A DNA stretch of 64,000 nucleotides from Selaginella moellendorffii (GCF_000143415.4 NW_003314305.1:1274834-1338833), one strand, 5' to 3'; shown: positions 18,238-55,064, numbered from the stretch's first letter. Notes: a model not told the origin generated them from the sequence alone. Numbers and translations: made by a program.

Positions 18238-20249
18238 TAGAGCTCAGATCCCCTGATGTTTCCATTCCACCCGATAAGAGACACATAACGTACCTCCTCC
18301 CGTTGTAAAGAAAAAAACAAAGAAGAAGACGAGAGAGAAATAGCAGCTCCTAGGGCCTGCATCTCCTTCGCCATCTCCTTTCCTATAAAATCGAATGGGG
18401 AAAGCATTTCAAAGTCAATATCCAGTGTCACCACACCCGAAAATTCCAAACTCACATCAATTCTCAAGCATACCTCTCTGCTTGTTTTGTTGTCTCGTAG
18501 CTTGCTCCATTATAGCTCCCCGGCTATATACATAATGAAAGGAAGCAGCTCTGGATAATTTTCACGTGAGCTCGATAGATACTTCACAACGGACCCCCGC
18601 CTCGCTCCACGCGCCGTCCGCTGTCGAGAATGGGATACCATACAGTTCGTTTTCGCTCGCGAATCTATGCAACTCAAGGGCCCGGCTCGCCACCACAAGG
18701 CACTGTTATTGGTGACCAAGGTGGGCTGCCCACGTGAGAATGGTGGCCCATGTTTCCGAGAACTTTGATCTATAACTGGTCAACTGGATCACATCTTCCT
18801 TTATTGTCCCTGGCTCGTAGCTGAATCAGCAAACAAGAAAAAATCGACCAGTTAGAAGCTTGGAACTGACTAGAAACCACAGTTAAGTACGGAGAAGAAA
18901 GACGTCCCACTGACCTGTGCGCCACACGGTTTTGGAGATTTACTCGGTTGACTTGATCAGTCGCCCGACTTGAGAGAAGGATTCAACGTATCAAATCGCA
19001 TCGAATCGTATAAGCCGCCGAGTTATCTGCTCTCAACCAGATTTCCAGATTCTCCGCGAAGCTGAGTAAGCGTTGGAGTGGTCCACAACGGCCCCGTAAG
19101 TCGCAAGTTTGTAGCCTCCGTTTGAGCGGTTTAGATACGCGGGTTGACATCTGGCTCCATACAACTAGCTCCATACAAGTCAAAAACGCTGCTTGGCGGT
19201 GCGCGTTGCCAGATCTCGTGGAAGTTTGATCGATCCTAGAAGGACCAGGTACGCTGCTTTGTGGAAAAAGAAATAGCGAGCGATCAGTCGGGAGGAGTTC
19301 AGTAGCGTTAAAACTTATAAGGACTTCGAAAGAAGTTCAAGAGCACCTCGGCTCGATAATTCTAGAAAAGTAGCAAAGGAATTTAGTTAGCCAGACAAAT
19401 GAACTACAAAGCAAACGAAAAACAAGCATGGAAAGAAAAGCTGTCAAGTCTGTGTGATCTCGAGGAGGTCGGATGCCTCGAGGCACAGAAAGATCGAATG
19501 CTTAAAAGGAGCTCATCAATCTTAAAGCCAGGCTAAAGTACCAAACCAAAAGGCATTTCTTAGGACAAGAAAAACGGTGTTTTAAGATCAGTTAGCCAGA
19601 CAAACACACTGCATTGAAAGAATAGAAGGATTGTCCAGGAGCTTTTCCTGGAGCAGAGCTCCAAGAACACAAACTGATCAGGTCAGGGAGCTACGCACAA
19701 TGCCTGCTAGATCGATTGAGGGAGCGAGAGAGATTCGAGGCGCTTACCAAGATCCACGCGAGCGGCGACGCGCGCTCCCCGCCCTCCCGAAACCCTAGAA
19801 TGAATGAACAAGGTTGTGAGGATTCAAAACTATCTCCATGGGACTTTCAGCAAACGGTTCACAATTGCTTACATCTCCACCGTCCCCCACGAATTGTACG
19901 GCCCCGATGTGGGCTTGCCAAAAAAATCGTACGGACACACGGCAAAAGAGGATTTGATGCTATAGATAAACATTTCGGTTCCTCGGTATAGAGGTTGCCG
20001 ATACAGGAAGTTTGATCCTTTTATATGTTTTTACAGTGGCTGGATTGTGGAGTGTTGCCATCAGCTTCAATGCCACTGGATTTAAGTGATTTTCATCCGC
20101 GAGGCTCGCATGGTATCGATTTCTCAGCATGCATGAAGTTAAAGAGAAACCTCGTGAAGAGATGCGAAGAATATACCAGAGATACTTTAGATTAGGGCGA
20201 AACTTTTTATAGAATGGAGTCGTGGTGCTCGATGGAAATTTTTTTTCAG

Positions 20250-21045
20250 GGTACTCGCATTGAGGTCACGAAAGAAGGTTTCAACTTGTTTTCTTTTCTT
20301 CTCGTCTGTAGTTTATTGACTAAAATCCAGCTTGCGAGACATGGCTTAAAAAAGTGCTAGCTGCGTTTCAGGATTTGTCGCGGACGTCGACATTAAATCC
20401 GAAAGGTATCGATGATAAGTGGTCTTCATGAAAGAGCTAAAATAACATGTGAACGTTGCAGAGCTTGATACGTATCTTACGCATCTTACGCTTGATACAT
20501 ATTTTACGTATCTTACTCTTGATACGTATCTTACGTATGTTACGTATCTTACGCTTCTGGCGGTACAACGGTGTTTTCACCTACGGTCCAGCGCCTGGAG
20601 CACCTTACTACGGCAAGCTCGATGGCATCAAAGTCGAGTGTGACAACGAGAGAAGGAAACGCGCTGCGACCAGCTACTCGGGACCGGTATCCTCGTCGCT
20701 GAGAAGCGACTGGAGAGTGATGGAGGGAGCATTCGTGATGTTTAACGTTCCTTGGGCTAGTGAAGGCTTCCCCGAGTCCAAGGTACACACTCTAAGATCT
20801 CGTTGTCTTTTCATAGCGGTTTGCAGACGAATTTCTATCCGGGACTGCAAGCTCATCGCCCTGCTTACAAGCATACAGCAAGGGAAAGCGGTGGAATCCA
20901 AGTATCTCACGTATGTCAAAGTAAGTCGCTCAAAAAGCTTACAGGAAGAGCGTAAGATTTTTCATTCATAGGTGAAAGCGTTCCTGGTGGAAGACTGTTC
21001 CAAGTAGGATACATCGATGTCAGTGGCGGGGTTGTGACGAGGATT
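20250..21045 (+). pseudogene. Sphingosine kinase (SPHK/LCB kinase) remnant, internally deleted
   Basis: Exon pieces GFVADVDIKSERYR, RYNGVFTYGPAPG, FNVPWASE, AVESKYLTYVKV, GYIDVSG match the plant SPHK motif order; stops and deletions present. Confidence 0.75.
20464..20556 (+). repeat. Minisatellite of 27-nt units built from a TATCTTACG 9-mer
   Basis: cttgatacgtatcttacgcatcttacg-like unit repeated about 3.5 times. Confidence 0.85.
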
Positions 21046-21560
21046 TGATAGCTGAGAGCAGTGGTACGATGCAAATGTCTCAATTCCAGGCATCTCTCTA
21101 TAAGATTCAACGTGAGTTTTTTTTTTTTCGCTTTCATTCAATTTTCGTACTAGCTGAAAATGCTGTTGTGGGGATACATACGATCAGTGTTCAGCTTTCC
21201 AGGTATTTCTGGTTCTGTTTATTCGCGTAACACGCTGCGATTTTGTTATAATGCACCTCTTACGAGCAGCGGAGCATTCATGTCCAGGTGCTAAGCTTGT
21301 GGCGGAATGTACACGAGTGAAGCCTTGCACGTCCCTTCCTTACAGGTCTCTGTCTATTTTGGATAGAAACTTATTTCCTTCTTTTGTAAAGTGTAGTTCT
21401 TCCATTCCATCTGAAGACCCTCTAAAGTTACATGAGTACCGGCTGCTTGGAAAGCCCTTGATGGAGCTTATGAGCACGAAAGAGTCGCTTCACAATGCCA
21501 TGGTCCTTGTAATGAGGATCGACAAAGACATCGCAATTTCGAGGTAGTGGAAACTTTATT
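21041..21560 (+). pseudogene. DHAD internal-exon remnant fused to the SPHK remnant
   Basis: ggatttgatagctga, cattcatgtccaggtgct, gaagaccctct and gagtcgcttcacaatgccatggtc match the intact DHAD at 52.8-53.7 kb. Confidence 0.85.
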
Positions 21561-21929
21561 TTTCTGGTTACTGAATTCGTTCGCGATGTGCAGGACACAA
21601 AGTTTGCTCGCCTTATAATAGATCACTTCGATTTATTGCGGATCTATTAAGTGAAGCATTGATAGTTTGCCCTTCCGAGCAAACCACGTAAGCTGCGCAG
21701 CCCTTGCTCGGTCTTTCAGCTCCTCGGGGGTGTTGAAATGACGGCCATGGGATCAGCACCGACATTCATGGATTCACAGAGAAGGGGTGTTGTGGAGGCA
21801 ATCAGCGCAAGAGGACTGTGAGATGCCGATCATGTAAGTAGATCTTCTTGCTGAGTGTGATTTCCTTTTCCTGGACTTTTCTTTGCCGGAGAGATCGATC
21901 GTTTTCATCAATGAAGACTAACTCCCAGC

Positions 21930-22860
21930 AGCTCGCATTGAGGTCACAAAAGAAGGTGTTTTCTCGTGACATAAAACTTTCTCTGTTTCACCAGCTTCAT
22001 GCGAGAGAGATGGCCAACTCAGTGAATACCACGCAGTATGATGGAGCTCCACTCCTTTTGCAGAGGCAATTACGCATGGCTTACGCCTAACTGGTATCCT
22101 CGGCAACTGGAGAGTGATGGAGGGAGCATCCGTGATGGTTTTGCTGCAAAACGTTCCTTGGGGTAAACCCGAGTCCAAGGTCACACTTAAGATTTCGCAT
22201 TCTCTTACGTCCATAGCAGTTTGCAGATGGTCTTCTGGATCTCATTGTTCTCTGTGACTCAAGTTCATTGGCCTGCTTACGAGCATACAGCGGTGGAATG
22301 CAAGTATCTCACGTATGTCTCACTCAAAGCTTTGTTTGATCTTTGATGCATTTATAGGTGCAAGTGTTCCCAGTGGAAGAGTGTTCCAAGGAGGATACAT
22401 CGACGTTGATGGTGAGGTAATCGATCACGGAGGAACTGTCAACGTGAGTTCTTTCTTATCGTTTTCATTTTTTTGGTTTGTAGCTGCAAATGCTACCAGC
22501 TACCAGGCATATTTTTGGTTCTTTTTTCTTTCGAGAATTTGTTGTTTAACGTACTTCTGACGAGCAGCGACTGAAAGTTTGCAGCATTCGTGTCCAGGTC
22601 CTGAGCTTGTGGCGGAATATACACAGCTGGCCAGTGCCAGAGAAGCCTTGGGTCCTTTATACAGGTCTTTGTCTCTTCTCGATAGAATTTATCTTCTTTT
22701 GTACATGCATATTTTCCATTCCATTTAAAGACTTGGAATCACACTTTCCATTCCTCAAGAGTGCCTGGAAAGCACTTGACAGAGTTTTTGAAGCTGAAAG
22801 ATACGAGAGTCACTTGACATGCCATTGTCCTTGTAAAGGCGCTGGGTAGTGGCAACTTTG
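21930..22860 (+). pseudogene. Second SPHK-DHAD chimeric remnant
   Basis: QLHAREMANSVNTTQYDG, NVPWG, DGLLDLIVL, GGYIDVDGEV, followed by DHAD-derived GGTV and HSCPG. Confidence 0.75.
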
Positions 22861-23169
22861 ATCCCCTGGCAATGATGATTCCCCACCATTGTGTTGCTCG
22901 CCAACAAAGTTGGCTATCTAAAGGTCTGTTTCATTCTCAATGTCCCAGTCTTTTGTGCTATTTCAGGTAAAGGATTTCAAAAAGCTGTGACATTCGCTCG
23001 ACATTCACTGGAAAAGTTCTTGTCACCCAAATGTGAGGTAGCTTTTGTATAGTGTAGCATCTTTGTGATTCTTTCTAGTGCTAGGATCCAATTATAACAA
23101 TGAAAATATGATTTATTACAAATCTTTGAATTTCACTATAAGACAAACTATAACATTTTTATCAAAACC

Positions 23170-23660
23170 CATGACGAACAATGTCCTCTCAACTCTGAAG
23201 GATATTTTCAAAATACTTTTGCAGCTGCTACTACTACCCTATCACCCTTGCCAACATTCTTTGCCTCACCCACCACATCATCCTCAGTATGCACTATTTT
23301 GCACACCACCAATTTCAACCATATTATCATAAAAAAAAGCTTTAAACAATAATTTCTTAAATATTACTTATTTCCATTAGACCACTTGCGCTTAACACCT
23401 TTAACTGCACAAATAGCTCAATATAGATAAGTCATTCAAGAAGATATTAAAAAAATTGTTGCTCAAAACTCTTCCCAAAAACAAAGACAACGAAGGCATG
23501 GGTGAAGTTGGAATTAGTGGCATAACAACCAAAGGTGACAATGGCAACAAAGTCAAAACTAGAATCAGATGTGGTAGGTGAGGCAGACAATGCTGGTGAT
23601 GCTGACAAGGACAAAGCTAGTAATGCCAGCAAGGGGAATGAAACAACAAAGAATTTATCA
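23170..23660. mobile_element. Degenerate copy of the foldback element seen at 39.7 and 47.4 kb
   Basis: Starts with the same terminal sequence (ctcaactctgaaggatattttcaaaatacttttgca); its flank 22870-23160 is the reverse complement of the flank next to the other copies. Confidence 0.5.
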
Positions 23661-23809
23661 TACCGCTGAATGTCAAACATTGAAACATCCAGACTCCACA
23701 TCGCTCTTCAACCGGATGCCCAGCCTATGCCTAAAACGGGTATATGGAAGAGGTACACAGAATATCTCAGAGAATGCCCAAGCATGGTCTGCTCACCTGG
23801 ACAGCGTTA

Positions 23810-24350
23810 CATGCCTAAGGCTTCAATGGTATTTGCCGTGTACATTCCACCACAAGTTCCAGGACATGAATGTTGCAAAACGTTCAGTCGCTGCTGGTCA
23901 GAAATGTGACCACCAACATATTCTCGGTAGCTGTCTGTACGTTAACAAAAACAAACCGAAACACAGCATAAGCTTCGTTTACGTGACCACCATGAGAAAC
24001 AAAACGAACCAGAAATACCTGGAAAGCTGACACTATATCGTACGCATGCCCGTTCAGGACTCCTGGCTGAATCAACAGTTTCAGCAAGTGCGAACAAAAG
24101 AAACCAAAAAGAAAGAGAAAACTTACTTTGATAGTTCCATAATGCTTGGTTGATTCAGCCTTCCCATTGCAATGAGAGTTCCTGGCATCTAAAGCACAAA
24201 GGAAGAATGAGAAGACCAAAAAGAAACAACAATGAGAAAGGGGAGCATAGTCGGTCACCTCGCAGCCTGGAATGGAGACATTTGCATCGTACCACTGTCC
24301 ACCCATGACAGTCTCGATGCTATCAGCTATAAAATCCCGCGACTGCAAGC
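23810..24350 (-). pseudogene. DHAD fragment (end of exon 1 to exon 4), inverted
   Basis: [28 protein letters not shown] plus downstream exons and introns homologous to 52.8-53.4 kb. Confidence 0.9.
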
Positions 24351-24364
24351 TAAAGCAAGCTAAA

Positions 24365-24960
24365 TGAGGGACGCTATCCTATCCCTCCAATCTGTTTTTA
24401 CGAAGGCACCTTCATGATTCCGGAGGAAAAGCTTTATTTTCTGGATTATGAGAGTAAGACCTGGAGCAGCATTCCAACTGAGAATCTTTCACTTGTGAGT
24501 TATGTTTTTATGTTCACACCATCTTTGGTGCCTCCATGATGCTATAAATCAAAGTGGCACTGTTACGGGCTCTGAAGCGAGTTCAGCTACAGATTCTACA
24601 GCTGCTGATCTCGTTCCACAAGAACATGCCTGAACTTTGCTGCCACTGTCCGTGAGAGTTAAGTTACAGAGATACTTTTTTTCGTTCTTGATTCATCCGT
24701 TTGCGTTCCTTTTGCTCCACTTCATTCTGCAGTATACGGACCTGTGTCCAATAAAAAAATGTCAAAAGCTTTGAAAACAAATCTCACAGCTTGTAACATT
24801 CGCTGCAACCTCTCAACCTCTTCATTGAGATTCTGGACGTACCAGAACAACTCGGGCATTCAGTATTTTATTTGTAGTTGGGTTGATATCTTGACGAATG
24901 TACATTCAAAGATCATGCTTCTAGTAAACTTCTGAAACTATTGCCCATATTAGAAACTTG
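24365..24960 (+). pseudogene. 3' end and 3' flank of the F-box gene (third copy)
   Basis: cgctatcctatccctccaatctg...gtgcctccatga is near-identical to 34565-34735 and continues into its flank. Confidence 0.9.
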
Positions 24961-25010
24961 TCTGATTTAAATCTTACAGTAATCCTTTATAAATGTAATA
25001 TGAAAAACGT

Positions 25011-25473
25011 GAAGAACAGAACCACAGGATCCCCATTTGCAACAATTGCTTCTTGAGGTGTGTGTTCCAGTGGTTTTTAATCTCGTTGTCAATTCGTCCA
25101 GGAATGTGCGATGCGATCACGGACAACCTGAAAGTGAAACACGCAAGAACTTAGAGAACGCAGAATTTAGAGGTAAAACTCTACAAACTGTTACCGGTTT
25201 CACAGGATTGAATGCAGCCAGATGTTGAGAAGCTCTTCTTGGGCTGTGATCCCGCCTCGTTTTATATCCGGCCGGAGATAGTTTGTCCATCGCAGCCTGC
25301 ACCGCAACGATTGAGTCCTGCTCGCAAGATCTAGGAGAAACAAGATGTGAGAAAATCGATTCACCCGCTTTCTCCGGTAGCGATTCTTGTGACCGTGTTT
25401 CCGAATGTAAGCGACGAGCTTCTCGGGGGCCTTTCGTGACTCCCTCTTTGCTCCGGCGAGGAGGCCTCCCCAT
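25011..25473 (-). pseudogene. R2R3-MYB pseudogene, truncated, with deletions
   Basis: Homologous to the MYB at 43438-44131 but lacks tggcagcccgaggaaga (first Trp) and other segments. Confidence 0.88.
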
Positions 25474-25687
25474 TGCAAAGCAAGGAGAAGTAAAGAGAGC
25501 GTTCTATAGACAGTGTGATTGTGTATTTATTTGTACACTTTTCCAGTGTAAGAAGCCTGGAGTGTGAGCTAGATTGCTAGACTTCTCCCTTTTGTCAAAA
25601 GGTTTCTTTTGGATTCACCGCTTTAGAGTTATAGACCGTCGCGGCTTTCAAAAGCTTTTCTCTTTTAGACGTTCCAGAAGACCACGT

Positions 25688-25895
25688 TGTAGTGGTGGAA
25701 TAAAGCGGGCGTAAGCCCGGGCGAGGCTCACCCGGCTAGAAGTGGTCAAGCCTGTCACCTCTGTATCGATCCACAGTCGAATCGATCGCTCCGGTCCACT
25801 TCAAGATCCCCCCAATCCTGCCTGGCAAGAAGTGCCGGCTGATCCCCCCGACCACGTCAGTGCTTACATGTCTTGCCTCACTTTGCAGTACGACA
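25688..25895. mobile_element. Solo-LTR-like insertion with a small 3' deletion, in the MYB/DHAD intergenic region
   Basis: Starts TGTAGTGG, ends ACA, flanked by ACGT on both sides; absent from the homologous site at ~44345. Confidence 0.7.
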
Positions 25896-26144
25896 ACGTC
25901 ATGGCTGCCGTATATTTCTTAGTCAATACAGTTGCCGGCCATACAGTACCCAAGTACGAAGGACGTGCTAGAAAGATTGGATTCTTCGCCACGTTTTTCT
26001 TTTGAAAGAAAGTAGGAACAAAGAATTACCTGGACATTTTGATCGTAATTAATCTTAAACTTACAGGGTCCAAAAGCCTAAATTCTGGTGAGAAAATGGA
26101 GCGCGCCCTCGCAAGAATGCGGCACCGGCGGTGAGCTCGATCAG

Positions 26145-26715
26145 GTTCGATCGTGCTGGTTTCTTCCATATGATCTTTCACTCAAAGTTTCCTTTTTTTT
26201 TCCTTTTGCCTTCCATGAAACACAGACACAACGCCTCCCAAGCAAATCCTCAAGGACTACAATGTTACCATGTATGATGCTGGCTTAGTTCCAGGAGCTC
26301 TTGTTTATCTATCCTACAACAATGGTAAGGTCTCTTTGCACGAAGTTCGGTTCTAAGGGATCTCTTTTCCTCCAGATTTCCAAGGGCCATATCTCAAGGA
26401 GATCGTCCTCGCTTCACAGCATTCGGATGAAGAATCCAAAGACCAAGTTTTAGCTCCACCAGTGGGATCTCCTCCTCGAGTAGCATCTCCGGAAGAAACA
26501 CGACCAAGCTCTCGACAAACAGTTCCTGTTGGTAAAGGAAGCAAATGGCTGAAGCATGGAAAATGAAAAGTTTTGGAAAGTAAAAAATGGAAGTTTCGGT
26601 GCAAACTTGGATCTACGAGCCGCTGCCTCAGCGTCACGGATTTCTTCAAGAATCTCTCTGGAAGGCAAAAGATTAAAAAAACAGGAAACTTTGAGTGCAA
26701 GATCATAGGGAAGAA
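26145..26715. pseudogene. PUX1 fragments in both orientations at the centre of inverted repeat 1
   Basis: 26145-26580 matches PUX1 3' exons (+); 26600-26730 matches PUX1 exon 4 and flanking intron (-). Confidence 0.85.
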
Positions 26716-26978
26716 ACCAACACGATCGAACCTAGGCCGGCGCCGCATTCTTGCGAGGGCTCCATTTTCTCCATTTTCTCATTTTCTCACCAGGATTTAG
26801 GGTTTTGGACCAGGTTTAAGATTAATTACGATCAAAATGTCCATGTAATTCTTTGTTCCTACTTTCTTTCAAAAGAAAAAGGTGGCGAAGAATCCAATCT
26901 TTCTAGCACGTCCTTCGTACTTGGGTACTGTATGGTTGGCAACTGCAGTGACTAAGAAATATACGGCAGCCATGACTT

Positions 26979-27204
26979 TGTAGCGGCCAATACTAATCCC
27001 GTACTGCAAAGTGAGGCAAGACATGTAAGCACTGACGTGGTCGGGGGGATCAGCCGGCACTTCTTGCCAGGCAGGATTGGGGGGATCTTGAAGTGGACCG
27101 GAGCGATCGATTCGACTGTGGATCGATACAGAGGTGACAGGCTTGACCACTTCTAGCCGGGTGAGCCTCGCCCGGGCTTACGCCCGCTTTATTCCACCAC
27201 TACA
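26979..27204. mobile_element. Solo-LTR-like insertion, 226 bp
   Basis: Terminal inverted ends TGTAGCGG...CCACTACA; flanks ACTT/ACGT; empty site in the 44 kb copy. Confidence 0.75.
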
Positions 27205-27422
27205 ACGTGGTCTTCTGGAACGCGTCTAAATGACAAGACAAGCTTTTGAAAGCCGCGACGGTCTATAACTCTAAAGCGGTGAATCCAAAAGAAACCTTTT
27301 GACAAGAGGGAGAAGTCTAGCAATCTAGCTCACACTCCAGGCTTCTTCCACTGGAATGTGTACAAATAAATACACAATCACACTGTCTATAGAACTCTCT
27401 CTTTACTTCTCCTTGCTTTGCA

Positions 27423-28077: not shown

Positions 28078-28154
28078 CACTGTATTCTCGGAACTTCTGG
28101 AGAAGAAATAAGAAGCGTCAGTAATCATACAAATAAAACTCGCTTACCATCGTG

Positions 28155-32043: not shown

Positions 32044-32099
32044 ACCTACCCTTACAGAAAGGGCTTCTTCTAGGTAACAAACCGTCAAAAAACATTCAT

Positions 32100-44696: not shown

Positions 44697-44709
44697 TCCT
44701 GGGGAGAAA

Positions 44710-47050
44710 ATGGCACAGCTACTGGGGAGCGCTCTCGGCCCGGCGCGGCCAATCCCTCGCAAGAATGCGGCGCCGTCCTCCATCGCCAGGGCATCGGTGA
44801 GCTCCTCCCCCACAGAGATCGCCGCTCCATCGCGGCAGCAGGGCGCCGGCGAGCACGCGATCGTGTTGAATCGCTACAGCAGCCGCGTGACGCAGCCCAA
44901 ATCCCAGGGCGCGTCGCAGGCCGTGCTCTATGGCGTGGGGCTGCGTGACGAGGACATGGCCAAGGCGCAGGTCGGGATCTCCTCGGTGTGGTACGAGGGC
45001 AACACTTGCAATATGCATTTGCTCAAGCTCTCCGAGGCTGTCAAGGAGGGCGTGCGCGAGGCTGGCATGGTGGGATTTCGATTCAACACCGTGGGGGTGA
45101 GCGATGCCATCTCGATGGGCACCGAGGGGATGTGCTATAGCTTGCAGTCGCGGGATTTGATAGCTGATAGCATCGAGACCGTCATGGGTGGACAGTGGTA
45201 CGATGCCAATGTCTCCATTCCAGGCTGCGATAAGAATGTAGGTGATCGAGCAAGCTCTTTCGAAAACTTCTCTATGCTCTCCTTTCTCTTTCTTGTTTCT
45301 TTTTTGTTTTCTCATTCTTTCTTTTTGCTTTTAGATGCCAGGAACTCTCATTGCAATGGGAAGGCTGAATCGACCAAGTATTATGGTTTACGGAGGAACT
45401 ATCAAAGTAAGTTTTCTCTTTCTTTTTGGTTTCTTTTGTTCGTGCTTGCTGAAAGTGTTGGTTCAGCCAGGAATCGTGAACGGGCATACGTACGATATAG
45501 TGTCAGCTTTCCAGGTATTTCTGGTTCTTTGTTTTTCTCATGGTGGCCGCGTAAACGAAGCCTATGCTGTGTTTTCGTTGTCTTCTCGGTTTATTTTTCT
45601 TAACGTACAGAGCTACGGAGAATATGTTGGTGGTCACATTTCTGACGAGCAGCGACTGAAAGTTTTGCAACATTCATGTCCAGGTGCTGGAGCTTGTGGT
45701 GGAATGTACACGGCAAATACCATGGCCAGCGCCATTGAAGCCTTAGGCATGTCCCTTCCTTACAGGTCTCTCTCTTAGTCTTTTACGTGTTTTCCGATAT
45801 TATTTATTTGTTATTTCTTTTGTAAATGCAGTTCTTCCATTCCAGCTGAAGACCCTCTGAAGCTACAAGAATGCCGACTGGTGGGAAAACACTTGCTGGA
45901 GCTGCTGAAGATGGACTTGAAGCCGAAAGACATAATCACGAAAGAGTCGCTTCACAATGCCATGGTCGTCGTAATGGCGCTGGGAGGATCGACAAATGCC
46001 GTGCTACACCTGATCGCAATTGCGAGGTAGTGAAAATCTGATCTTTCTGGTTGTTATTGAGTTTCGCTAGTTACGCAGGTCAGTAAACGTACCACTGACC
46101 TTGGACGACTTTCAGAAAGTTAGTGACAAAGTTCCGTTTATCGCTGATCTTAAACCCAGCGGGAAGTATGTAATGGAGGACTTGCATAAGGTCTGTAATT
46201 CCCAGTTTTGTGGTGACTCACAATATATTGCGATGTCACAGATCGGTGGAACGCCTGGCGTTTTAAAGTATCTGCTTGAGGAGGGCTACCTCAATGGCGA
46301 CTGCATCACTGGTAACTTCAAGAAATGGAGTGATCTTGCGCGAAGTAACGTTTTTTTTTTTTGTTTCTCTCTCTCTCTCTTTTCTGGTATGTCCAGTGAC
46401 TGGCAAGACCTTGTCGGAAAATATATCCATCTGCCCGCCCTTGAGCGAGGGACAGGTAACAACTTAAATTCAGCCTGGTGTTTCCTTGACACAATATTTC
46501 ACAGGATGTCATACATCCTCTAGATCGGCCGATCAAGTCGACTGGCCACATACAGACCTTGCTCCCGAGGGCTCCGTTGCAAAAATCACTGGGAAAGAGG
46601 GTCTTTACTTTTCAGGTGGAAATGCATTTTGTTGTTTGTTCTTTTTACTAATTACGAGATTTTTGCTTGCCAGGTCCTGCTCGGGTTTTCGAAGGCGAAG
46701 AAGCTATGCTTTCAGCGCTGTCTGAGAATCCTCAAAGCTTCAAGGTATACTTTTTTCTCTATGTCCAAAACAAGATATGATAATCACTGGTGATCGGTGA
46801 AATGCTCAGGGCTCCGTGATTGTTATCAGGGGAGAAGGTCCCAAAGGTGGTCCGGGAATGCCTGAGATGCTAACTCCTACAAGTGCGATCATGGGTGCTG
46901 GCTTGGGGAAGGTGTGTAAAGTTCGTTTTCTATGTTTCGCCATGAAAATCTCACTCCCTTTCTTTCCAGGAAGTAGCTCTCCTCACGGATGGGAGATTTT
47001 CAGGAGGTTCTCATGGTTTTGTCGTTGGACACATTTGTCCAGAAGCCCAG
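44710..47050 (+). pseudogene. DHAD: DHAD copy A: frameshifted and 3'-truncated
   Basis: Near-identical to copy B but lacks atcttgtatggaa (13 nt) near 46555 and the last two exons. Confidence 0.88.
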
Positions 47051-47444
47051 GTACTCACACAAACGAGCTCATTTCTTGATATGATATAAGCAACTTCTCC
47101 CCACTCGCTCGGTCTCTTTGCTTGTTTCTAGGGTAGTGAGTGTTAGCATGTAGAAGCTCTCATAGATTCTATCCTATCTTCTCCATCAGTTCTGTGCTTC
47201 AATGATTTTGTTTGTGTGTGTGATGTCCTGATGCAGCAATTCTCTGCTAAGGTGGAGCACTTCTTTCCCACCAGCGACCATGTTGGGCAATGGGAGGAAG
47301 CTTGCAAGCTGGTTGCATTCCTGGAGCAGTTGAAGAATGACAACTATGTCACCGTAGACAAGGTTTTTCTCCTTTTACTCTTTGTTCCTTACTTCCCATT
47401 TCTTTATCTTTTGTTTTCCAGGTTGTTCGTTTTTTTTGCTTTTG

Positions 47445-48387
47445 ATCACATAACAATCTCAGCTCTTAGGGACATTCTCGAACTGTTTTGCAATTATTGT
47501 TATTGCCGCCTCATCGTCCCTGCCGTCCTCATCATCTTTGTTTTTTTCCACCATTATTGTTATCTTTGCCATCACTGCCCAACTTGCCGGAATTGCCAGT
47601 TTCAGCTGCCAAAGGTTTACCGTTAGATTCATTGAAACTGTCAGTGGCAGCTGCTAACAGTTCACCGCTAGATTCGTCGGAACTGCCAACACCAGCTGTC
47701 AAAATCATTATTTCTAGGCATTATAGTGTCCTTGGGAAAAACTTCGAAAGGTGATTTCTTTAACTTTTTCTTAAATGCTCTTTGAACGTTTGAACGCTTA
47801 CTCAAGTCGGTTGGAACGCATGATCCTGAATACACTTTTGATTGCAAGTGGGGGAAATTCAAAATTTATATGAATAAAAGGTATTGGAAAATAGTTGAGC
47901 TAGAACCCGATGGTGGCACATTACATTCGAGGCCTCCATGGGAATCCTCGAATGTAATGTATAGAGACATCTTCCAATATTTACTGTTCATGTAAGTCTT
48001 GATTTTTCCCGCACTCCGACCGAATCTATTGAGTAAGCGTTTTGACATTCAAAAAGCATTTAAGAAAAAATTCAAAAAATCACCTTTTGAGGCTCTTTCA
48101 AGGAGATTGTAGTACCTGGAATCAGTGACGTGACAGTTTTGGCAGTTAGTGATGGCAGTTCCAGCGAGTCTAATGGTGAGCCGTTAACAGCTAGCATTGA
48201 CGGTTTCGGTATGTTTGGCAGTGAGCCTTTGGCGGTTGGCATTGATAGTTTCGGGTGGTGATGGCGAAAATAATGATAATGGTGAAGATGACAAAAATGG
48301 TAAGGACAGTGGGGATGATGAGGCGGCAATGGCAATAATTGCAAAGCACTTTAAGAATGTCCTTGAGAGTTAAGATTGTTCTATGAT
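47445..48387. mobile_element. ~940-bp foldback element, copy B
   Basis: Ends atcacataacaatctcagctcttagggacattc / gaatgtccttgagagttaagattgttctatgat; centre cattacattcgagg...cctcgaatgtaatg. Confidence 0.75.
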
Positions 48388-48619
48388 AGATTTTGTAGAG
48401 CATCGCATTTTGTTTTGTGAAATTCAAAGATCAATAATAAAACATATTGTCATTGTCATGCTTAGCCAGTGTGAAAACAGATAACACAGAGGCTACCAAA
48501 CTACCAAACATTTCTGGGCAATAGAAACTTTTCTAATGAATGTCACAGCTTTCTAAAATCCTTTAACTGGAATAATACAAAAGGTGAAGCCCAGGACAAC
48601 AAGAGTGAGCTCTGGGCGA

Positions 48620-49860
48620 AGGCAAGCAATGCAATGGTAGGGAATCGTCACTGGCAGATCAAACCCAGTCCCATTACGAGGACAATGGCATGTCAAGAGA
48701 CTAGCAACTCCATCAAGTGCTTTGGAATGGACAAGATCTATCGAGAAGAGACAGAGACTGAAGGACCCAGGCTTCACTGGCACTGGCCAGCCATGTATAT
48801 TCCACTGCAAGCTCAGGACCTGGACATGAATGCTGCAAATTTTCAGTCGCTGCTCGTCAGAAGTACGTTAAACAACAAATTCGCACCAGGAGAACCAAAA
48901 ACATTTTTGTACACTGATCATATGCATGCCTGTTGATAATTCAGGCATACATGTCGATAATGTTGGCTGCTGATAGCATTTGCAGCTAGCATGAACAAAA
49001 AAAACGAAAACGAACTCACGTTGACAGTTCCTTCGTGATCGATTACGTCACCATCAACGTTGATGTATCCTCCTTGGAACACTCTTCCACTGGGAACACT
49101 TGCACCTATATATGCATCAAAGATCAAACAAAGCTTCGAGTGAGACATATGTGAGATACTTGCATTCCACCGCTGTATGCTCGCAAGCAGGCCAATGAAC
49201 TTGAGTCCCGGAGAACAATGAGATCCAAAGACCATCTGCGAACTAGAACAAAAAAAAGAGTTTTGGAAGGAGAACTTACACAGATCTCTGGCTGTAGTAG
49301 CAATTTTTCCAGCATTGTAACAAGCTACACAACCAGATCTAGAGGACGAAAATCGGCCTCAACCATGATGCTATCCAGGAACCGGACACGAAGTGTGGCC
49401 TGCAAGGAGAAAAGCATGTAAGTCAGACGATCCATGGAGTGACAATTTCATTACCTTAGCAAACTTGGATCTACGAGCTGCTGCCTCAGCGTCACGGCTT
49501 TTTGCTGTCTTCAAGAATCTCTCTGGAAGGAAAACAAAAAAAAGGAAACTTTGAGTGAAAGATCATATGGAAGAAACCAACACGATCGAACCTGCCGACC
49601 TTTTCTTTTCTTGGACACCAATCGGGCATAATCTTCCGGAGTTAGCTCGTAGAATTCATCGCTCTCGGCCTCCTCTGCCCCACCCATCAAAATCGAAAAC
49701 TCGGAAAGGACTTCTCTCGCCTTTGCCAGTCGCGTGCTGAATCGGGGCCTCCAACGCCGCGGGATTGACGAACACACTTGAGAATTCTTGGAAGAACTCT
49801 AATAAGGTCTTTATGGCGACCACGGAAGCGCATTGTCGGCGCCTGGCAGCAATCGCTGGT
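48620..49860 (-). pseudogene. PUX1(5')-SPHK-DHAD chimeric remnant, unit B
   Basis: Near-identical to 40880-42062. Confidence 0.75.
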
Positions 49861-49969
49861 TTGTACCGTGTGATCGAACTCTCCAATCCTGAAAATTCTC
49901 TCTTACAGGCGGCAGTGAGAAGCTGGATTGAAAGACATCTCCAAGTGATTTTCCCGCGCTAGGGTGGGG

Positions 49970-51040
49970 GAGGACGATCCACGACTGGATTGGAGAAGCG
50001 CATTGACGGATTGGATTGGAGGTATGCCGCGCTGCTCGAGAGATTCAAGCGGCCGAAGATTGGGGGCGGGGATTCCCGTGAAGCCGCCATTGGCACCAAA
50101 GAAGCCGCTGGATGATTGGGTCTTTGTATATGGCCATCCAAAACGACTGATTTTTCTTGTTCTTTGTTCCCTTCCATTTTTTTTCCTTGTTTCTTTGTTT
50201 CTTTGGTTCCATTTTTGCTTCTGTTTTTCCCTTTCTTTTTCGTTCTTTGGGGATGCTTACCGGACGAATGCTATGATTCTGTACAGACGTTCCAGGTAGT
50301 TTTTCTCCCTTCGATCGTCACAATCTATCTAAAAAAATGGTCGTTTTGTTCCTTCTTCCAGAAGATGGAAGCCACTGGAGTTTTAGTTGGAAAGCGAAGA
50401 CTCTACGACTACTTGGGTGAGAACTCGTTCTTTCTTGCGATGGATGATAGATGTTCTTATGTAAATGTAGCTGGTGGAGTATATTTTGCACAGCCTGCAA
50501 CGCGAAGAGCCCGCTATCAAGAGGATTGGAGGAATTAGAGACAAGGAGGTATGCATCACCTTTTCGAAAGCCTGGAATGATTTTTCTTAGATGGAACAAT
50601 GCACCATGAGCTTATCCAACTTACTGTAGTAGTTGCCACTATTGTTGAGAGAGAGGAAGAACTATATAATCTTGATAGTGGTTTTATATATAGTTTACAT
50701 GAGAACCAAGTAGGTAGTAGTAGGAGTTGAATTTGGTTAGAATGAGTTAGTTGGAAAAGAAATCTACCATACAAGATGTTTGACAGAGAGGTGAGGTTGT
50801 CTTTGTGATAAAGTCTAAATACGTTTCTTTCGTGTTTCAGGAGCTCTGGTGGCTTATAAAGAATCTCAAGGAAAGGATTTCCATGAGAGACAAGCTTCCA
50901 ATGAAGGATCCGCTGTGGGAGCATCAATCAACGAAATGTATCCGTGCCGAGAACCGTTTGAGACGTTTCTTACAAGATCTAGCCCGGAGAGATTACAGTG
51001 GTAAAGCTTGGAGGATATGCATTTGTTCTCAACTGGAAGT
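49970..51040 (+). pseudogene. Third, deleted copy of the orphan gene
   Basis: Homology to 28155-29350 with deletions and frameshifts. Confidence 0.75.
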
Positions 51041-51128
51041 AGCACGATGGTAAGCGAGTTTTATTCGTATGATTACTGACGCTTCTTATTTCTTCTCCAG
51101 AAGGTCAGATCATTCCGAGAATACAGTG

Positions 51129-51819
51129 TCACATTCCAACAGCCTTTAAAATGGTCGTCCAAAACTCGCTGGATTCCATCGTTTCTAACATTCGTTTAGT
51201 ACCTCCTCTCTCGGACGATGAGAAAGATCCATCCATTGCTGAAAGGTGACGCACCTGGTAACCAGATAAATCCTCAGGATTGAAGCAAGCGTCGAGGTGG
51301 AAATAGCTGCCATCAGGAAGAACAGAACCACAGGATCTGTGAGTCAATGGATCAATCCCCATCTGTAACAGTTGCTTCTTGAGGTGTGTATTCCAGTGGT
51401 TTTTAATCTCGTTGTCAGTTCGTCCAGGAATGTGCGATGCGATCACGGACCACCTGAAAGTGAGAAACGCAAGAACTAGGTAAAACTCTACAAACTCTTA
51501 CCGGTTACCCAGGATTGAATGCAGCCAGATGATGAGAACCTCTTCTTGGGCTGTGATCCCGCCTCGTTTTATATCCGGCCGGAGATAGTTCGTCCATCGC
51601 AGCCTGCAACTCTTGCCGCAGCGATTAAGTCCTGCTCGCAAGATCCAAGAGAAACTATGAGACGAAGATGTGAGAAATCGATTCACCTGCTTTCTCCGGT
51701 AGCGCTCTCCAATTCTCGTGACCGTGTTTCCGAACGTAAGCGACGAGCTTCTCGTCTTCCTCGGGCTGCCAGGGGCCTTTCGTGAGTCCCTCTTTGTTCC
51801 GGCGAGGAGGCCTCCCCAT
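51129..51819 (-). CDS. R2R3-MYB transcription factor, copy B
   Basis: Same motifs and exon structure as copy A; few substitutions. Confidence 0.92.
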
Positions 51820-52377
51820 TGCAAAGCAAGGAGAAGTAAAGAGAGCGTTCTACACACGCTGTGATTGTGTATTTATTTGCACACTTTTCCAGTGTAAGAA
51901 GCCTGGAGTGTGAGCTAGATTGCTAGACTTCTCCCTTCTGTCAAAAGGTTTCTTTTGGATTCATCGCTTTAGAGTTATAGATCGTCGCGGCTTTCAAAAG
52001 CTTGTCTTGTCTTTTAGACGCGTTCCAGAAGACCACGTATATCTCTATGGAAAAACTTAGTCAATGCAGTTGCCGACCATACAGTACCCAAGTACGAAGG
52101 ACATGGAGAAAGTTTGGAATGTTCGCCACCTTTTTCGTTTGAAAAGAAAGTAGGAGCGAAGAATTACCTGGAGCTGGACGTTTTGATCGATCATGTCATT
52201 CATACACAGTTGTCATTATAAATTTAAATATAATTTTAATTAACTAATAATAAGTATAATTAATTACTAATGACTATAACTATAACTAATTATATTATTT
52301 CATAAAGGTAGAGATAAACCCTAAAGGTCCAAATCTTAAACCCTAAAGGGTCCAAAACCCTAAATCCTGGGGAGAAA

Positions 52378-55064
52378 ATGGCACAGCTACTGGGGAGCGC
52401 TCTCGGCCCGGCGCGGCCAATCCCTCGCAAGAATGCGGCGCCGTCCTCCATCGCCAGGGCATCGGTGAGCTCCTCCCCCACAGAGATCGCCGCTCCATCG
52501 CGGCAGCAGGGCGCCGGCGAGCACGCGATCGTGTTGAATCGCTACAGCAGCCGCGTGACGCAGCCCAAATCCCAGGGCGCGTCGCAGGCCGTGCTCTATG
52601 GCGTGGGGCTGCGCGACGAGGACATGGCCAAGGCGCAGGTCGGGATCTCCTCGGTGTGGTACGAGGGCAACACTTGCAATATGCATTTGCTCAAGCTCTC
52701 CGAGGCTGTCAAGGAGGGCGTGCGCGAGGCTGGCATGGTGGGATTTCGATTCAACACCGTGGGGGTGAGCGATGCCATATCGATGGGGACCGAAGGGATG
52801 TGCTATAGCTTGCAGTCGCGGGATTTGATAGCTGATAGCATCGAGACCGTCATGGGTGGACAGTGGTACGATGCCAATGTCTCCATTCCAGGCTGCGATA
52901 AGAATGTAGGTGATCGAGCAAGCTCTTTCGAAAACTTCTCTATGCTCTCCTTTCTCTCTCTTGTTTCTTTTTTGTTTTCTCATTCTTTCTTTGTGCTTAT
53001 AGATGCCAGGAACTCTCATTGCAATGGGAAGGCTGAATCGACCAAGTATTATGGTTTACGGAGGAACTATCAAAGTAAGTTTTCTCTTTCTTTTTGGTTT
53101 CTTTTGTTCGTGCTTGCTGAAAGTGTTGGTTCAGCCAGGAATCGTGAACGGGCATACGTACGATATAGTGTCAGCTTTCCAGGTATTTCTGGGTCTTTGT
53201 TTTTCTCATGGTGGTCGCATAAACGAAGCCTATGCTGTGTTTTCGTTGTCTTCTCGGTTTATTTTTCTTAACGTACAGAGCTACGGAGAATATGTTGGTG
53301 GTCACATTTCTGACGAGCAGCGACTGAAAGTTTTGCAACATTCATGTCCAGGTGCTGGAGCTTGTGGTGGAATGTACACGGCAAATACCATGGCCAGCGC
53401 CATTGAAGCCTTAGGCATGTCCCTTCCTTACAGGTCTCTCTCTTAGTCTTTTACGTGTTTTCCGATATTATTTATTTGTTTTTTCTTTTGTAAATGCAGT
53501 TCTTCTATTCCAGCTGAAGACCCTCTGAAGCTACAAGAATGCCGACTGGTGGGAAAACACTTGCTGGAGCTGCTGAAGATGGACTTGAAACCGAAAGACA
53601 TAATCACGAAAGAGTCGCTTCACAATGCCATGGTCGTCGTAATGGCGCTGGGAGGATCGACAAATGCCGTGCTACACCTGATCGCAATTGCGAGGTAGTG
53701 AAAATCTGATCTTTCTGGTTGTCATTGAGTTTCGCTAGTTACGCAGGTCAGTAAACGTGCCACTGACCTTGGACGACTTTCAGAAAGTTAGTGACAAAGT
53801 TCCGTTTATCGCTGATCTTAAACCCAGCGGGAAGTATGTAATGGAGGACTTGCATAAGGTCTGTAATTCCCAGTTTTGTGGTGACTCACAATATATTGCG
53901 ATGTCACAGATTGGTGGAACGCCTGGCGTTTTAAAGTATCTGCTTGAAGAGGGCTACCTCAATGGCGACTGCATCACTGGTAACTTCAAGAAATGGAGTG
54001 ATCTTGCGCAAAGTAACGTTTTTTTTTTGTTTCTCTCTCTCTCTTTTCTGGTATGTCCAGTGACTGGCAAGACCTTGTCGGAAAATATATCCATCTGCCC
54101 GCCCTTGAGCGAGGGACAGGTAACTTAAAAATTATCCTGGTGTTTCCCTTGACATAAATTATTTTACAGGATGTCATACATCCACTAGATCGGCCGATCA
54201 AGTCGACTGGCCACATACAGATCTTGTATGGAAACCTGGCTCCCGAGGGCTCCGTTGCAAAAATCACTGGGAAAGAGGGTCTTTACTTTTCAGGTGGAAA
54301 TGCATTTTTGTTGTTTGTTCTTCTTTTTACTACTTACGAGCTTTTTGCTTGCCAGGTCCTGCTCGGGTTTTCGAAGGCGAAGAAGCTATGCTTTCAGCGC
54401 TGTCTGAGAATCCTCAAAGCTTCAAGGTTTACTTTTTTCTCTCTGTCCAAAGCAAGATATGATAATCACTGGTGATCGGTGAAATACTCAGGGCTCCGTG
54501 ATTGTTATCAGGGGAGAAGGTCCCAAAGGTGGTCCGGGAATGCCTGAGATGCTAACTCCTACAAGTGCGATCATGGGTGCTGGCTTGGGGAAGGTGTGTA
54601 AAGTTCGTTTGCTATGTTTCGCCATGAAAATCTCACTCCTTTCTTTCCAGGAAGTAGCTCTCCTCACGGATGGGAGATTTTCAGGAGGTTCTCATGGTTT
54701 TGTCGTTGGACACATTTGTCCAGAAGCCCAGGTACTCATACAAACGAGCTCATTTCGTCTCTATTTGTTAAATTCATGTTGTGTGATTTCCAGGTTGGGG
54801 GTCCAATCGCCTTAGTCCGAGATGGAGATAGAATCACTCTTGACATTGAGAAGCGACTGATTGATCTCGGCGTGGCCGAGGACGAGCTTGCGGCACGAAA
54901 GAAAGCGTGGACAGCGCCACCTCTCAAGGCAACTCGTGGAACGCTATACAAGGTAAGAACAAAGCAAATAAAAAGCTGTCAAAGTTTTCACGGTGGATTT
55001 GATTTCCTTGCAGTACATCAAGAATGTGAAGTCCGCCTCCGAAGGCTGCGTGACCGATGAATAG
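52378..55064 (+). CDS. DHAD: Dihydroxy-acid dehydratase (IlvD family, plastid), apparently intact
   Basis: Transit peptide; [84 protein letters not shown]; ends GCVTDE*. Confidence 0.96.

What the first reader, a model, noticed from the sequence alone, without database searches (positions are those of the whole stretch)
19800..55064. 35-kb self-shuffling gene block with reciprocal single-copy retention
Seen: much of this region is made of copies of neighbouring genes. An ancestral order can be rebuilt as FIP37+, F-box+, PUX1-, orphan+, MYB-, DHAD+, tRNA-Tyr, RBR, ADF. It recurs as an inverted copy (26.7-32.5 kb), an internally deleted direct copy (24.4-26.1 kb), a shrunken copy (36-39 kb) and two tandem units. 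Intact copies are spread across different duplicates: PUX1 and the best orphan copy in the inverted block, F-box at 33.7 kb, DHAD only in unit B, ADF at 57 kb. Only MYB keeps two intact copies. Inference: fractionation of the kind known after whole-genome duplication, occurring at a single locus, with dosage selection returning genes to one copy.
Basis: partly seen in the sequence, partly recalled or inferred. Interest (0 to 1): 0.78.

Follow-up and report, generated by a model that had tools for sequence, protein, structure and literature searches.

The report
Nested local gene duplications decaying in spikemoss
A 38-kb stretch of the spikemoss Selaginella moellendorffii genome has been copied onto itself at least five times, and the spare gene copies are being erased by small deletions; this is a clear but ordinary case of duplicate birth and death, with nothing pointing to selection on gene dosage.

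Summary
91% of 19.8-55.1 kb has a paralogous match in the window, against 0% in the left flank.

The window lies on the 1.63-Mb scaffold of Selaginella moellendorffii. The other haplotype scaffold encodes matching paralogues (two MYBs, PUX1 plus a decayed PUX1, an R-type and an I-type F-box), so this is not an assembly artefact.

- PUX1 in the inverted block
- F-box open reading frame at 33.7 kb
- two MYBs
- DHAD in unit B only
- tRNA-Tyr
- ADF

Corrections:
- FIP37 is only a fragment.
- The duplication runs on to 58.6 kb.
- There are further remnants at 20.7-24.4 and 39.07-39.29 kb.
- The RBR gene is frameshifted.

Some spare copies were complete and constrained for a long time (DHAD-A omega 0.03, ADF copy-0 omega 0.09) and then broke, which is fractionation-like. 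However:
- Most pieces are fragments, or copies of copies that were already dead.
- Loss is mostly one-sided.
- The intact F-box shows no constraint.
- Long coexistence of two constrained copies argues against dosage selection.

Decay runs through deletions of about 10 bp without microhomology. The scan has noted the same kind of locus, and the same deletion pattern, elsewhere in this genome.

The parts
20706..23311 (.). Oldest debris: two copies of the 'Z-edge' sequence joined to DHAD exon 2-5 fragments
   Evidence: 7-25% substitution divergence from Z and DHAD of units A and B.
23809..24357 (-). Inverted DHAD fragment (end of exon 1 to exon 4)
   Evidence: Pfam ILVD_EDD_N; 6% divergence; omega 0.97.
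24363..26215 (.). 'Direct' fragment block and left arm of the small palindrome: F-box 3' piece (24363-24880), dead MYB (25029-25687, minus strand), MYB-DHAD spacer
   Evidence: The MYB shares deletions of 17, 7, 9, 7 and 20 bp with the inverted MYB copy, so it was copied from a gene that was already dead.
26216..26658 (+). Centre of the small palindrome, holding a copy of the last two PUX1 exons
   Evidence: tblastn with PUX1 proteins; 3.3% divergence from 30169-30553.
26659..32554 (.). Inverted block. Contains dead MYB (about 27400-28100, +), orphan ORFs (28158-29037, -), intact PUX1, a spacer, a broken F-box and the FIP37 3' fragment. 29724-32554 is the left arm of the large palindrome
29465..30536 (+). 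PUX1, intact: six exons with GT-AG introns
   Evidence: The exon set translates exactly to XP_024541190.1; exon hits.
31065..32196 (-). F-box pseudogene with a 17-bp frameshifting deletion and a 21-bp deletion
32555..33172 (.). Centre of the large palindrome: PUX1 UBX-exon fragment (32560-32754) and the 5' part of the FIP37/WTAP fragment
32900..33600 (+). FIP37/WTAP gene fragment, not an intact gene
   Evidence: Two consecutive ORFs hit Pfam Wtap positions 39-61 and 61-92, below threshold; a conserved FIP37 (WTAP-family) motif was found only here.
33716..34735 (+). F-box, intact 339-codon ORF in the right arm (33173-36051)
   Evidence: Pfam F-box. 95% identical to the allele EFJ36088 of the other haplotype. 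Omega 1.2 against its twin; no excess of change in the broken twin.
35256..36051 (-). 3' part of PUX1. The 5' part, the orphan, MYB and DHAD exons 1-5 are missing through an inferred deletion of about 4.1 kb, whose junction lies at 36051|36064
36064..39045 (+). Shrunken copy ('copy 0'): DHAD exons 6-14, tRNA-Tyr, RBR, ADF and the 5' part of the next gene, all riddled with deletions
   Evidence: 2982 bp against 4811 bp in the intact copy; 12 gaps against 1 extra base in the DHAD part.
39073..39290 (+). Third remnant of the DHAD exon 12-13 plus tRNA-Tyr 3' half. The B box is intact at 39277-39287. It sits just upstream of unit A, separated from Z_A by about 140 bp of filler (39291-39430)
39431..47075 (+). 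Tandem unit A: Z_A (39431-41500), truncated dead PUX1 (41495-42150, -), orphan, MYB_A (43438-44131, -, intact), DHAD_A (44710-47050, exons 1-12 with a 13-bp deletion in exon 9 and no exons 13-14)
47076..47156 (.). A-to-B junction filler. It holds a 23-nt inverted copy (47123-47145) of the sequence just left of Z_A (39408-39430)
47157..54756 (+). Tandem unit B: Z_B with a self-inverted stretch of about 940 bp (47445-48387) and an inverted DHAD exon-4 piece, dead PUX1 (49240-49900, -), orphan, MYB_B (51129-51819, -, intact)
52378..55064 (+). DHAD, intact: 14 exons, 13 GT-AG introns of 50-97 nt, 608 codons
55167..55249 (+). tRNA-Tyr(GUA) with a 13-nt intron, intact
   Evidence: Rfam tRNA, 59.7 bits; ARAGORN.
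55364..56500 (+). RING-between-RING (IBR) gene with a frameshift inside RING1 at about 55815-55830
   Evidence: Pfam IBR; frame analysis.
57083..57920 (+). ADF, with both large exons open
   Evidence: Pfam Cofilin_ADF; ORFs.
58081..58558 (+). 5' part of an unnamed gene. This is the right edge of the old long duplication, and the edge lies inside the ORF 58315-58980

Best explanation
This is a hotspot of nested local segmental duplications in Selaginella moellendorffii. Redundant copies are then lost by neutral, deletion-driven decay.

**Inferred ancestral order:** (FIP37 fragment) - F-box - PUX1 - orphan - MYB - DHAD - tRNA-Tyr - RBR - ADF - next gene.

**Inferred order of events**, from synonymous divergence and shared deletions:
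1. An old long duplication running from inside PUX1 to inside the gene after ADF. This gave copy 0 and the unit-B-plus-downstream copy (pS about 0.1).
2. An inverted duplication of F-box to MYB, which built the large palindrome (pS about 0.04).
3. A deletion of about 4 kb in the right-hand copy. It removed the 5' part of PUX1, the orphan, MYB and the 5' part of DHAD.
4. A second inverted duplication of the already dead MYB (about 3%).
5. Amplification of a Z-to-tRNA tandem unit, the last step giving units A and B (pS about 0.02).

Older fragments at 20.7-24.4 kb record still earlier rounds.

**Decay.** Purifying selection keeps at least one working copy of each needed gene. The other copies accumulate deletions with a median of about 10 bp and no microhomology. 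Some broke soon after duplication. Others stayed constrained for a long time first (DHAD-A, ADF copy-0).

**Shown:** the block structure, gene status, divergences, omega values, deletion statistics, and matching sets of paralogues encoded on both haplotype scaffolds.

**Inferred:** the order of events, the ancestral order, and the neutrality of loss.
For: - **Structure:**
- **Species and haplotype:** PUX1, MYB_A and MYB_B translate exactly to XP_024541190.1, XP_024541225.1 and XP_024541226.1 of the 1,630,749-bp scaffold.
- **Other haplotype:** the 4,463,058-bp scaffold has two MYBs (XP_024518613, XP_024518621), PUX1 (XP_024518664), a decayed PUX1/Z model (EFJ36084), an R-type F-box (EFJ36088) and an I-type F-box chimera (EFJ36485).
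- **Intact DHAD_B:** 14 exons, all GT-AG.
- **DHAD_A:** a 13-bp deletion in exon 9 and no exons 13-14, yet 10 synonymous against 1 non-synonymous difference, and exons 0.69% against introns 4.4%.
- **ADF copy-0:** omega 0.09.
- **Dead MYB copies** share five deletions.
- **Copy 0** is 38% shorter than its intact counterpart, with 12 gaps against 1 insertion in the DHAD part.
- **Deletions:** 31 of 4 bp or more, median 10 bp, microhomology 0.84 against a null of 0.76.
- **Literature:** S. moellendorffii is reported to have 6,693 tandem gene duplicates and no whole-genome duplication (PMC5750206).
Against: - No outgroup DNA was available, so parent and daughter copies and the exact order of events are not rooted.
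- A/B divergence is uneven: 0.3-3.6% in well-aligned parts and up to 30% in the palindromic part of Z. Gene conversion or further rearrangement may therefore blur the ages.
- The origin of Z and of the junction fillers is unexplained.
- The neutrality of loss is the default model, not a demonstrated fact.
- The other haplotype scaffold carries a second PUX1-like RefSeq model (XP_024516658) whose position I could not find.
Confidence: 0.8

Rival explanations
1. One reading: fractionation of the whole-genome-duplication kind at a single locus, with dosage selection actively returning each gene to one copy and the survivors distributed reciprocally among the duplicates.
For: - One intact copy for PUX1, F-box, DHAD, tRNA-Tyr and ADF, spread over three blocks.
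- DHAD-A and ADF copy-0 were constrained genes before they broke.
- From general knowledge, DHAD is usually single-copy in plants.
Against: - Two constrained DHAD copies coexisted for most of pS 0.026, and two ADF copies for longer still. That is not what selection against a double dose predicts.
- Loss between the two long copies is one-sided.
- Only one gene pair is reciprocal.
- The F-box shows no constraint.
- RBR is frameshifted in its only near-complete copy and broken in its duplicate.
- Many copies are fragments, or copies of dead copies.
- MYB is still present in two copies in both haplotypes.
Confidence: 0.1
2. Assembly or haplotype-merging artefact: some duplicates (above all units A and B, about 2% apart) are the two haplotypes stacked in one scaffold.
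For: A/B divergence is low.
Against: - The window has no N.
- The A-to-B junction is unique sequence holding a 23-nt inverted templated piece.
- The separately assembled other-haplotype scaffold also has two MYB genes with a decayed PUX1/Z model between them, and both F-box types.
- A and B differ by 43 indels and by a strongly diverged Z part.
Confidence: 0.03
3. Transposon-mediated capture: the gene pieces, especially the old debris at 20.7-24.4 kb and Z, were gathered and moved by a Pack-MULE- or Helitron-like element rather than by local duplication.
For: - Z holds a self-inverted stretch of about 940 bp and an inverted DHAD exon piece.
- The same Z-edge-plus-DHAD composite occurs four times.
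Against: - All captured pieces come from genes of this same locus.
- The large blocks are collinear multi-gene segments that include introns and spacers.
- No transposase or helicase domain was found in the few Z and left-debris ORFs scanned.
- No terminal repeats flank the blocks. This was not searched exhaustively, and the rest of the genome could not be searched.
Confidence: 0.05
4. The palindromes built from dead MYB, F-box and PUX1 copies are functional: they are transcribed into long hairpins whose small RNAs regulate the intact paralogues.
For: - Arms of 1.2 kb (2.9% apart) and 2.9 kb (3.8% apart) with short spacers.
- The inverted-duplication model of plant MIR gene origin exists (PMC3237417).
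Against: - No expression or small-RNA data were available here.
- The arms decay at the same indel rate as other dead copies.
- An earlier follow-up note on another palindrome in this genome reported no hairpin transcript (unchecked).
Confidence: 0.05

Closest known systems
Birth-and-death evolution of tandem and segmental duplicates (non-functionalisation of redundant copies)
   Same: - Repeated local duplication.
- One copy kept by purifying selection, the others becoming pseudogenes.
- The youngest duplicates are still intact (MYB A and B).
- S. moellendorffii is reported to be rich in tandem duplicates (PMC5750206).
   Different: The density and nesting are unusual: direct, inverted and tandem events, at least five of them, within 38 kb. 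They involve unrelated housekeeping genes rather than one expanding gene family.
Post-polyploidy fractionation by short deletions, biased to one homeologue (maize; PMC2893956)
   Same: - Genes are removed piecemeal by short deletions (5-178 bp in maize; a median of 10 bp among the within-alignment gaps measured here).
- One of two long copies takes nearly all the losses (copy 0).
   Different: - The duplicates here are local, not whole-genome.
- The deletions lack the flanking direct repeats reported in maize for 10 of 16 cases. Here microhomology is 0.84 against a null of 0.76.
- Many copies here are partial rather than full-length.
Complex rearrangements with inverted duplications and templated junction insertions (replication-based template switching, FoSTeS/MMBIR type; from general knowledge)
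   Same: - Duplication plus inverted duplication.
- Junctions with short inverted templated pieces (23 nt at 47123-47145).
- Junction fillers made of nearby sequence.
   Different: The mechanism is only inferred from junction anatomy. The events are spread over time (pS 0.02 to 0.1 or more) rather than arising in one burst.
Reciprocal gene loss and the gene-balance (dosage) hypothesis
   Same: F-box survives in one arm of the large palindrome and PUX1 in the other.
   Different: This is a single reciprocal pair. There is no evidence of dosage sensitivity, and two constrained DHAD and ADF copies coexisted for a long time.

Membership tests
Whole-genome-duplication-style fractionation acting locally | The lost copies began as complete, working duplicates | tested here: inconclusive
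   - Yes for DHAD-A (omega 0.03, P=5.5e-4 against neutrality since birth) and ADF copy-0 (omega 0.09, P=0.006).
- MYB-inv and F-box-inv are full-length copies.
- No for the PUX1 copies in units A and B (cut at the Z junction), the next-gene fragment, the DHAD fragments at 20.7-24.4 kb and in Z, and MYB-dir, which was copied from a dead gene.
Whole-genome-duplication-style fractionation acting locally | Loss by short deletions | tested here: met
   31 deletions of 4 bp or more, median 10 bp. Copy 0 has 12 gaps against 1 insertion in the DHAD part. There is also one deletion of about 4 kb at 36051|36064.
Whole-genome-duplication-style fractionation acting locally | Survivors distributed reciprocally between the duplicates | tested here: not met
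   - Copy 0 against unit B plus downstream: every surviving gene is on the unit-B side.
- Only F-box and PUX1 are reciprocal between the palindrome arms.
Dosage (gene-balance) selection for single copy | Duplicates are removed faster than neutral decay, or two copies are deleterious | tested here: not met
   - Two DHAD copies stayed under purifying selection for most of pS 0.026, and two ADF copies for longer.
- MYB is duplicated in both haplotypes.
- A direct fitness or expression test is not possible with these tools.
Assembly or haplotype-merging artefact | Duplicates absent from an independent assembly of the same locus | tested here: not met
   The other-haplotype scaffold (4,463,058 bp) carries a matching set of paralogues.
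R2R3-MYB gene (MYB_A, MYB_B) | Two Myb repeats, the usual three-exon structure (133 and 130 nt for the first two exons), open frame | tested here: met
   Pfam Myb_DNA-binding. Exons of 133, 130 and 325 nt; 195 codons; exact match to the RefSeq proteins.
Dihydroxy-acid dehydratase (IlvD/Edd family), copy B | Complete N- and C-terminal IlvD/Edd domains in an uninterrupted spliced frame | tested here: met
   - ILVD_EDD_N positions 1-285 and ILV_EDD_C positions 1-182 are covered exon by exon.
- Collinear with bacterial IlvD residues 8-541.
- 14 exons, all GT-AG, 608 codons, one terminal stop.
FIP37/WTAP gene | Full WTAP domain in an open frame | tested here: not met
   Only Wtap model positions 39-92 of 155 are matched, below threshold, in two short ORFs. 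A conserved stretch that follows this region in Arabidopsis FIP37, as I recall that sequence, is missing.

The most novel reading that the evidence does not exclude
The locus is more than passive debris. Two ideas fit the data but are untested:
1. The two palindromes made from dead MYB, F-box and PUX1 copies give long hairpin RNAs whose small RNAs tune the surviving paralogues, an early stage of the inverted-duplication route to MIR genes.
2. The tRNA-Tyr gene, through its TFIIIC-binding B box, acts as a recurrent breakage or template-switch site that keeps seeding new duplications. A B-box-bearing tRNA remnant lies about 140 bp upstream of unit A's left edge.
Probability: 0.08. Interest if true: 0.55.

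Novelty: new member of a known kind. Interest (0 to 1): 0.3.

Why it matters
Selaginella is reported to lack whole-genome duplication (PMC5750206). Local duplication of this kind is therefore its main source of new gene copies.

This locus shows several stages of the process side by side:
- fresh intact duplicates (MYB A and B);
- a duplicate that was constrained for most of its life and has just broken (DHAD-A);
- older copies shrinking by small deletions (copy 0);
- near-vanished remnants (39073-39290 and 20.7-24.4 kb).

It gives a second, independent measurement of the deletion pattern in this genome: about 10 bp, with no microhomology. That differs from the direct-repeat deletions described for maize fractionation.

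It does not reveal a new kind of system, and it does not support dosage selection.

Tried and rejected
No DNA of the other haplotype could be fetched, and all haplotype evidence is at protein level.
- **Typed peptide anchors.** I worked from printed coordinates instead.
- **Automatic spliced model.** One guided by a bacterial IlvD placed spurious introns where the bacterial protein gives no support, so I dropped it for the hand-checked exon set.
- **'Born truncated'.** My first idea, that DHAD-A was born truncated because unit A ends in intron 12, is rejected by omega 0.03 and by the exon/intron contrast. The remnant at 39073-39290 suggests the older unit reached the tRNA.
- **Orphan ORFs.** No Pfam hit and no protein-atlas relative. 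Whether they form a gene stays open.
- **F-box exact look-up** was negative. The v1 model EFJ18567 is a 673-aa chimera reading from the F-box through copy-0 pseudogene pieces.
- **Selaginella genome paper** (PMC3166216) is not held.
- **Earlier notes** searched by sequence for Z gave nothing.
- **MYB-A against MYB-inv** over the whole CDS is inflated by misalignment. The trimmed comparison was used instead.
- **Joined models.** Exon sets were checked in scripts only for frame, splice sites, codon differences and identity to fetched RefSeq proteins.

Full report
**What the window is.** The first exon of a UBX-domain gene, searched by reference, found only Selaginella moellendorffii proteins. 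Three exon sets in the window translate exactly to RefSeq proteins of the 1,630,749-bp scaffold:
- PUX1 = XP_024541190.1
- MYB_A = XP_024541225.1
- MYB_B = XP_024541226.1

The allelic proteins of the 4,463,058-bp scaffold differ by a few residues. That scaffold is therefore the other haplotype of this heterozygous assembly. The flanks hold ordinary genes: DHFR-TS, alpha-tubulin and an O-methyltransferase.

**Observation.** Self-BLASTN shows that 91% of 19800-55064 has a paralogous match of 100 bp or more. The figure is 0% for the 19.8 kb to the left.
- tandem units A (39431-47075) and B (47157-54756);
- a large palindrome (29724-32554 against 33173-36051);
- a small palindrome (25011-26215 against 26659-27886);
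- an inverted block (26659-32554) collinear with PUX1-orphan-MYB of units A and B;
- a shrunken copy (36064-39045) of 53748-58558.

- The duplication runs to 58558 and cuts an unnamed gene there.
- A third remnant of the DHAD 3' end plus the tRNA lies at 39073-39290.
- Older debris at 20.7-24.4 kb is made of DHAD pieces and a 'Z-edge' sequence.
- The 2-kb Z segment at the head of each tandem unit contains an inverted DHAD exon piece and a self-inverted stretch of about 940 bp.

**Gene status.**
- *DHAD_B* (52378-55064) has 14 exons, 13 GT-AG introns of 50-97 nt and 608 codons. Its exons cover both IlvD/Edd Pfam domains and are collinear with a bacterial IlvD.
- *DHAD_A* keeps exons 1-12 with all splice sites. 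It has a 13-bp deletion in exon 9 and lacks exons 13-14.
- *PUX1* is intact only in the inverted block. The copies in units A and B are cut after the UBX exon at the Z junction and are frameshifted. The right-arm copy lacks its 5' part.
- *F-box:* the open reading frame at 33716-34735 is intact. Its twin at 31065-32196 has a 17-bp frameshift and a 21-bp deletion.
- *MYB:* MYB_A and MYB_B are both complete at 195 codons. The inverted and direct MYB copies share deletions of 17, 7, 9, 7 and 20 bp, so the direct copy was made from a gene that was already dead.
- *tRNA-Tyr(GUA)* at 55167-55249 is intact. The copy near 37.0 kb has 12- and 6-bp deletions.
- *ADF* is open at 57.1-57.9 kb and broken in copy 0.
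- *RBR* in copy 0 is full of deletions. The 'good' copy also has a frameshift inside RING1, so the window holds no clearly intact RBR.
- *FIP37* is only a WTAP fragment, with Pfam positions 39-92 matched below threshold.
- *The orphan ORFs* have no detectable relatives.

**Ages.** Substitution-only divergence is as follows:

| Comparison | Divergence |
|---|---|
| Unit A vs unit B | about 2% |
| Small palindrome arms | 2.9% |
| Large palindrome arms | 3.8% |
| Copy 0 vs intact copy | 4-6% (up to 10%) |
| Inverted block vs units A/B | 4-10% |
| Leftmost debris | 6-25% |

Synonymous divergence gives the same order: A/B 0.015-0.026; palindrome arms 0.04-0.047; copy 0 against the intact copy 0.08-0.22; inverted block against A/B 0.08-0.12.

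The simplest history is:
1. an old long duplication from inside PUX1 to inside the gene after ADF;
2. an inverted duplication of F-box to MYB;
3. a deletion of about 4 kb at 36051|36064;
4. a second inverted duplication of the dead MYB;
5. amplification of the Z-to-tRNA unit, ending with units A and B.

Without an outgroup, the order and the choice of parent copy are inferences.

**Is it an artefact?** No.
- The window has no N.
- The A-to-B junction is unique sequence with a 23-nt inverted templated piece.
- The separately assembled other haplotype has two MYB genes with a decayed PUX1/Z model between them, an intact PUX1, an R-type F-box and an I-type F-box chimera.

**Testing the interpretation.**

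*In favour.* DHAD_A against DHAD_B shows 10 synonymous and 1 non-synonymous differences. Exons differ by 0.69% and introns by 4.4%. If DHAD_A had been neutral since birth, one or fewer non-synonymous changes out of 11 has P=5.5e-4. DHAD_A was therefore a constrained, presumably complete gene for most of its life, and its two lesions are recent. The remnant at 39073-39290 suggests the older tandem unit reached the tRNA. Truncation by a later junction deletion is therefore plausible. ADF in copy 0 shows the same pattern (8 synonymous, 3 non-synonymous; P=0.006). Loss of once-working duplicates does happen here.

*Against.*
- Most 'copies' are fragments cut by breakpoints, or copies of dead copies.
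- Between the two long copies every surviving gene is on one side.
- Only F-box and PUX1 are reciprocal.
- The intact F-box has omega 1.2 against its broken twin. With paralogue outgroups, its lineage took 12 amino-acid changes against 11 for the broken twin.
- RefSeq lists no protein for that F-box in this haplotype, and the v1 model is a chimera.
- MYB has two copies because units A and B are the youngest event. Both haplotypes keep both copies.

Long coexistence of two constrained DHAD and ADF copies is the opposite of what selection against a double dose predicts. Neutral loss of redundant copies, with purifying selection on the last one, explains everything seen.

**How copies decay.**
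- Copy 0 is 2982 bp against 4811 bp in the intact copy. In the DHAD part it has 12 gaps against one inserted base.
- Across four block pairs there are 31 deletions of 4 bp or more with clean flanks. Their median length is 10 bp and their microhomology is 0.84 bp against a null of 0.76.
- This agrees with an earlier follow-up note on another locus of this genome (s1-368730).
- It differs from maize fractionation, where most deletions had flanking direct repeats (PMC2893956).

**Comparison and novelty.** The locus belongs to a known kind: a cluster of nested segmental duplications undergoing birth and death. It sits in a genome reported to be rich in tandem duplicates and to lack whole-genome duplication (PMC5750206). 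The scan has noted similar loci elsewhere in this genome. Its value is as a tidy time series, and as a second data point on the deletion pattern.

**Limits.**
- No expression data were available.
Exons were searched by reference, and exon sets were only checked inside scripts.
- The position of XP_024516658, a second PUX1-like model on the other scaffold, is unknown.

Noticed in passing
window 55760-55930: The RING-between-RING gene next to tRNA-Tyr has its N-terminal ORF, ending in the first Cys-x2-Cys, in one frame. The rest of RING1, the IBR domain and the start of RING2 (which continues in the next exon) are in another. This is a frameshift at about 55815-55830 with no room for an intron. 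It is either a recent pseudogene or a sequence error.
   Followed up: partly
window 39246-39290 (B box 39277-39287): A remnant of the tRNA-Tyr 3' half with an intact B box lies about 140 bp upstream of tandem unit A, separated from it by filler (39291-39430). No 30-bp array was seen here.
   Followed up: partly
window 47445-48387 and 39722-40661: Each Z segment contains an imperfect self-inverted stretch of about 940 bp (66% identity) with a 45-bp tandem repeat. Its origin is unknown and there are no Pfam hits. It could be an old foldback element or an older inverted duplication.
   Followed up: partly
other haplotype proteins EFJ36084 and XP_024516658 (P0002, P0133): On the other haplotype, the decayed PUX1 between the two MYBs carries an exon stretch identical to the working PUX1. 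A second, apparently complete PUX1-like RefSeq model also exists on that scaffold. Haplotypes may therefore differ in how far decay, or gene conversion, has gone.
   Followed up: partly
window 33716-37473 (protein EFJ18567, P0144): The v1 gene model SELMODRAFT_444516 (673 aa) is a chimera. It reads from the F-box through the spacer, the dead DHAD, the dead tRNA and the dead RBR of the shrunken copy. It is an annotation artefact created by pseudogene fragments with open frames.
   Followed up: yes
window 57401-57688: A small internal tandem duplication of about 150 bp (12% apart) lies in the intron region after ADF exon 2.
   Followed up: no
window 20463-20553: A 27-bp (9-bp sub-period) tandem repeat sits at the left edge of the duplicated area.
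   Followed up: no
window 16762-17628: A COMT-like O-methyltransferase exon lies just left of the finding. With DHFR-TS at about 1-1900 and alpha-tubulin at 11.6-13.0 kb (minus strand), the single-copy flank is ordinary.
   Followed up: no
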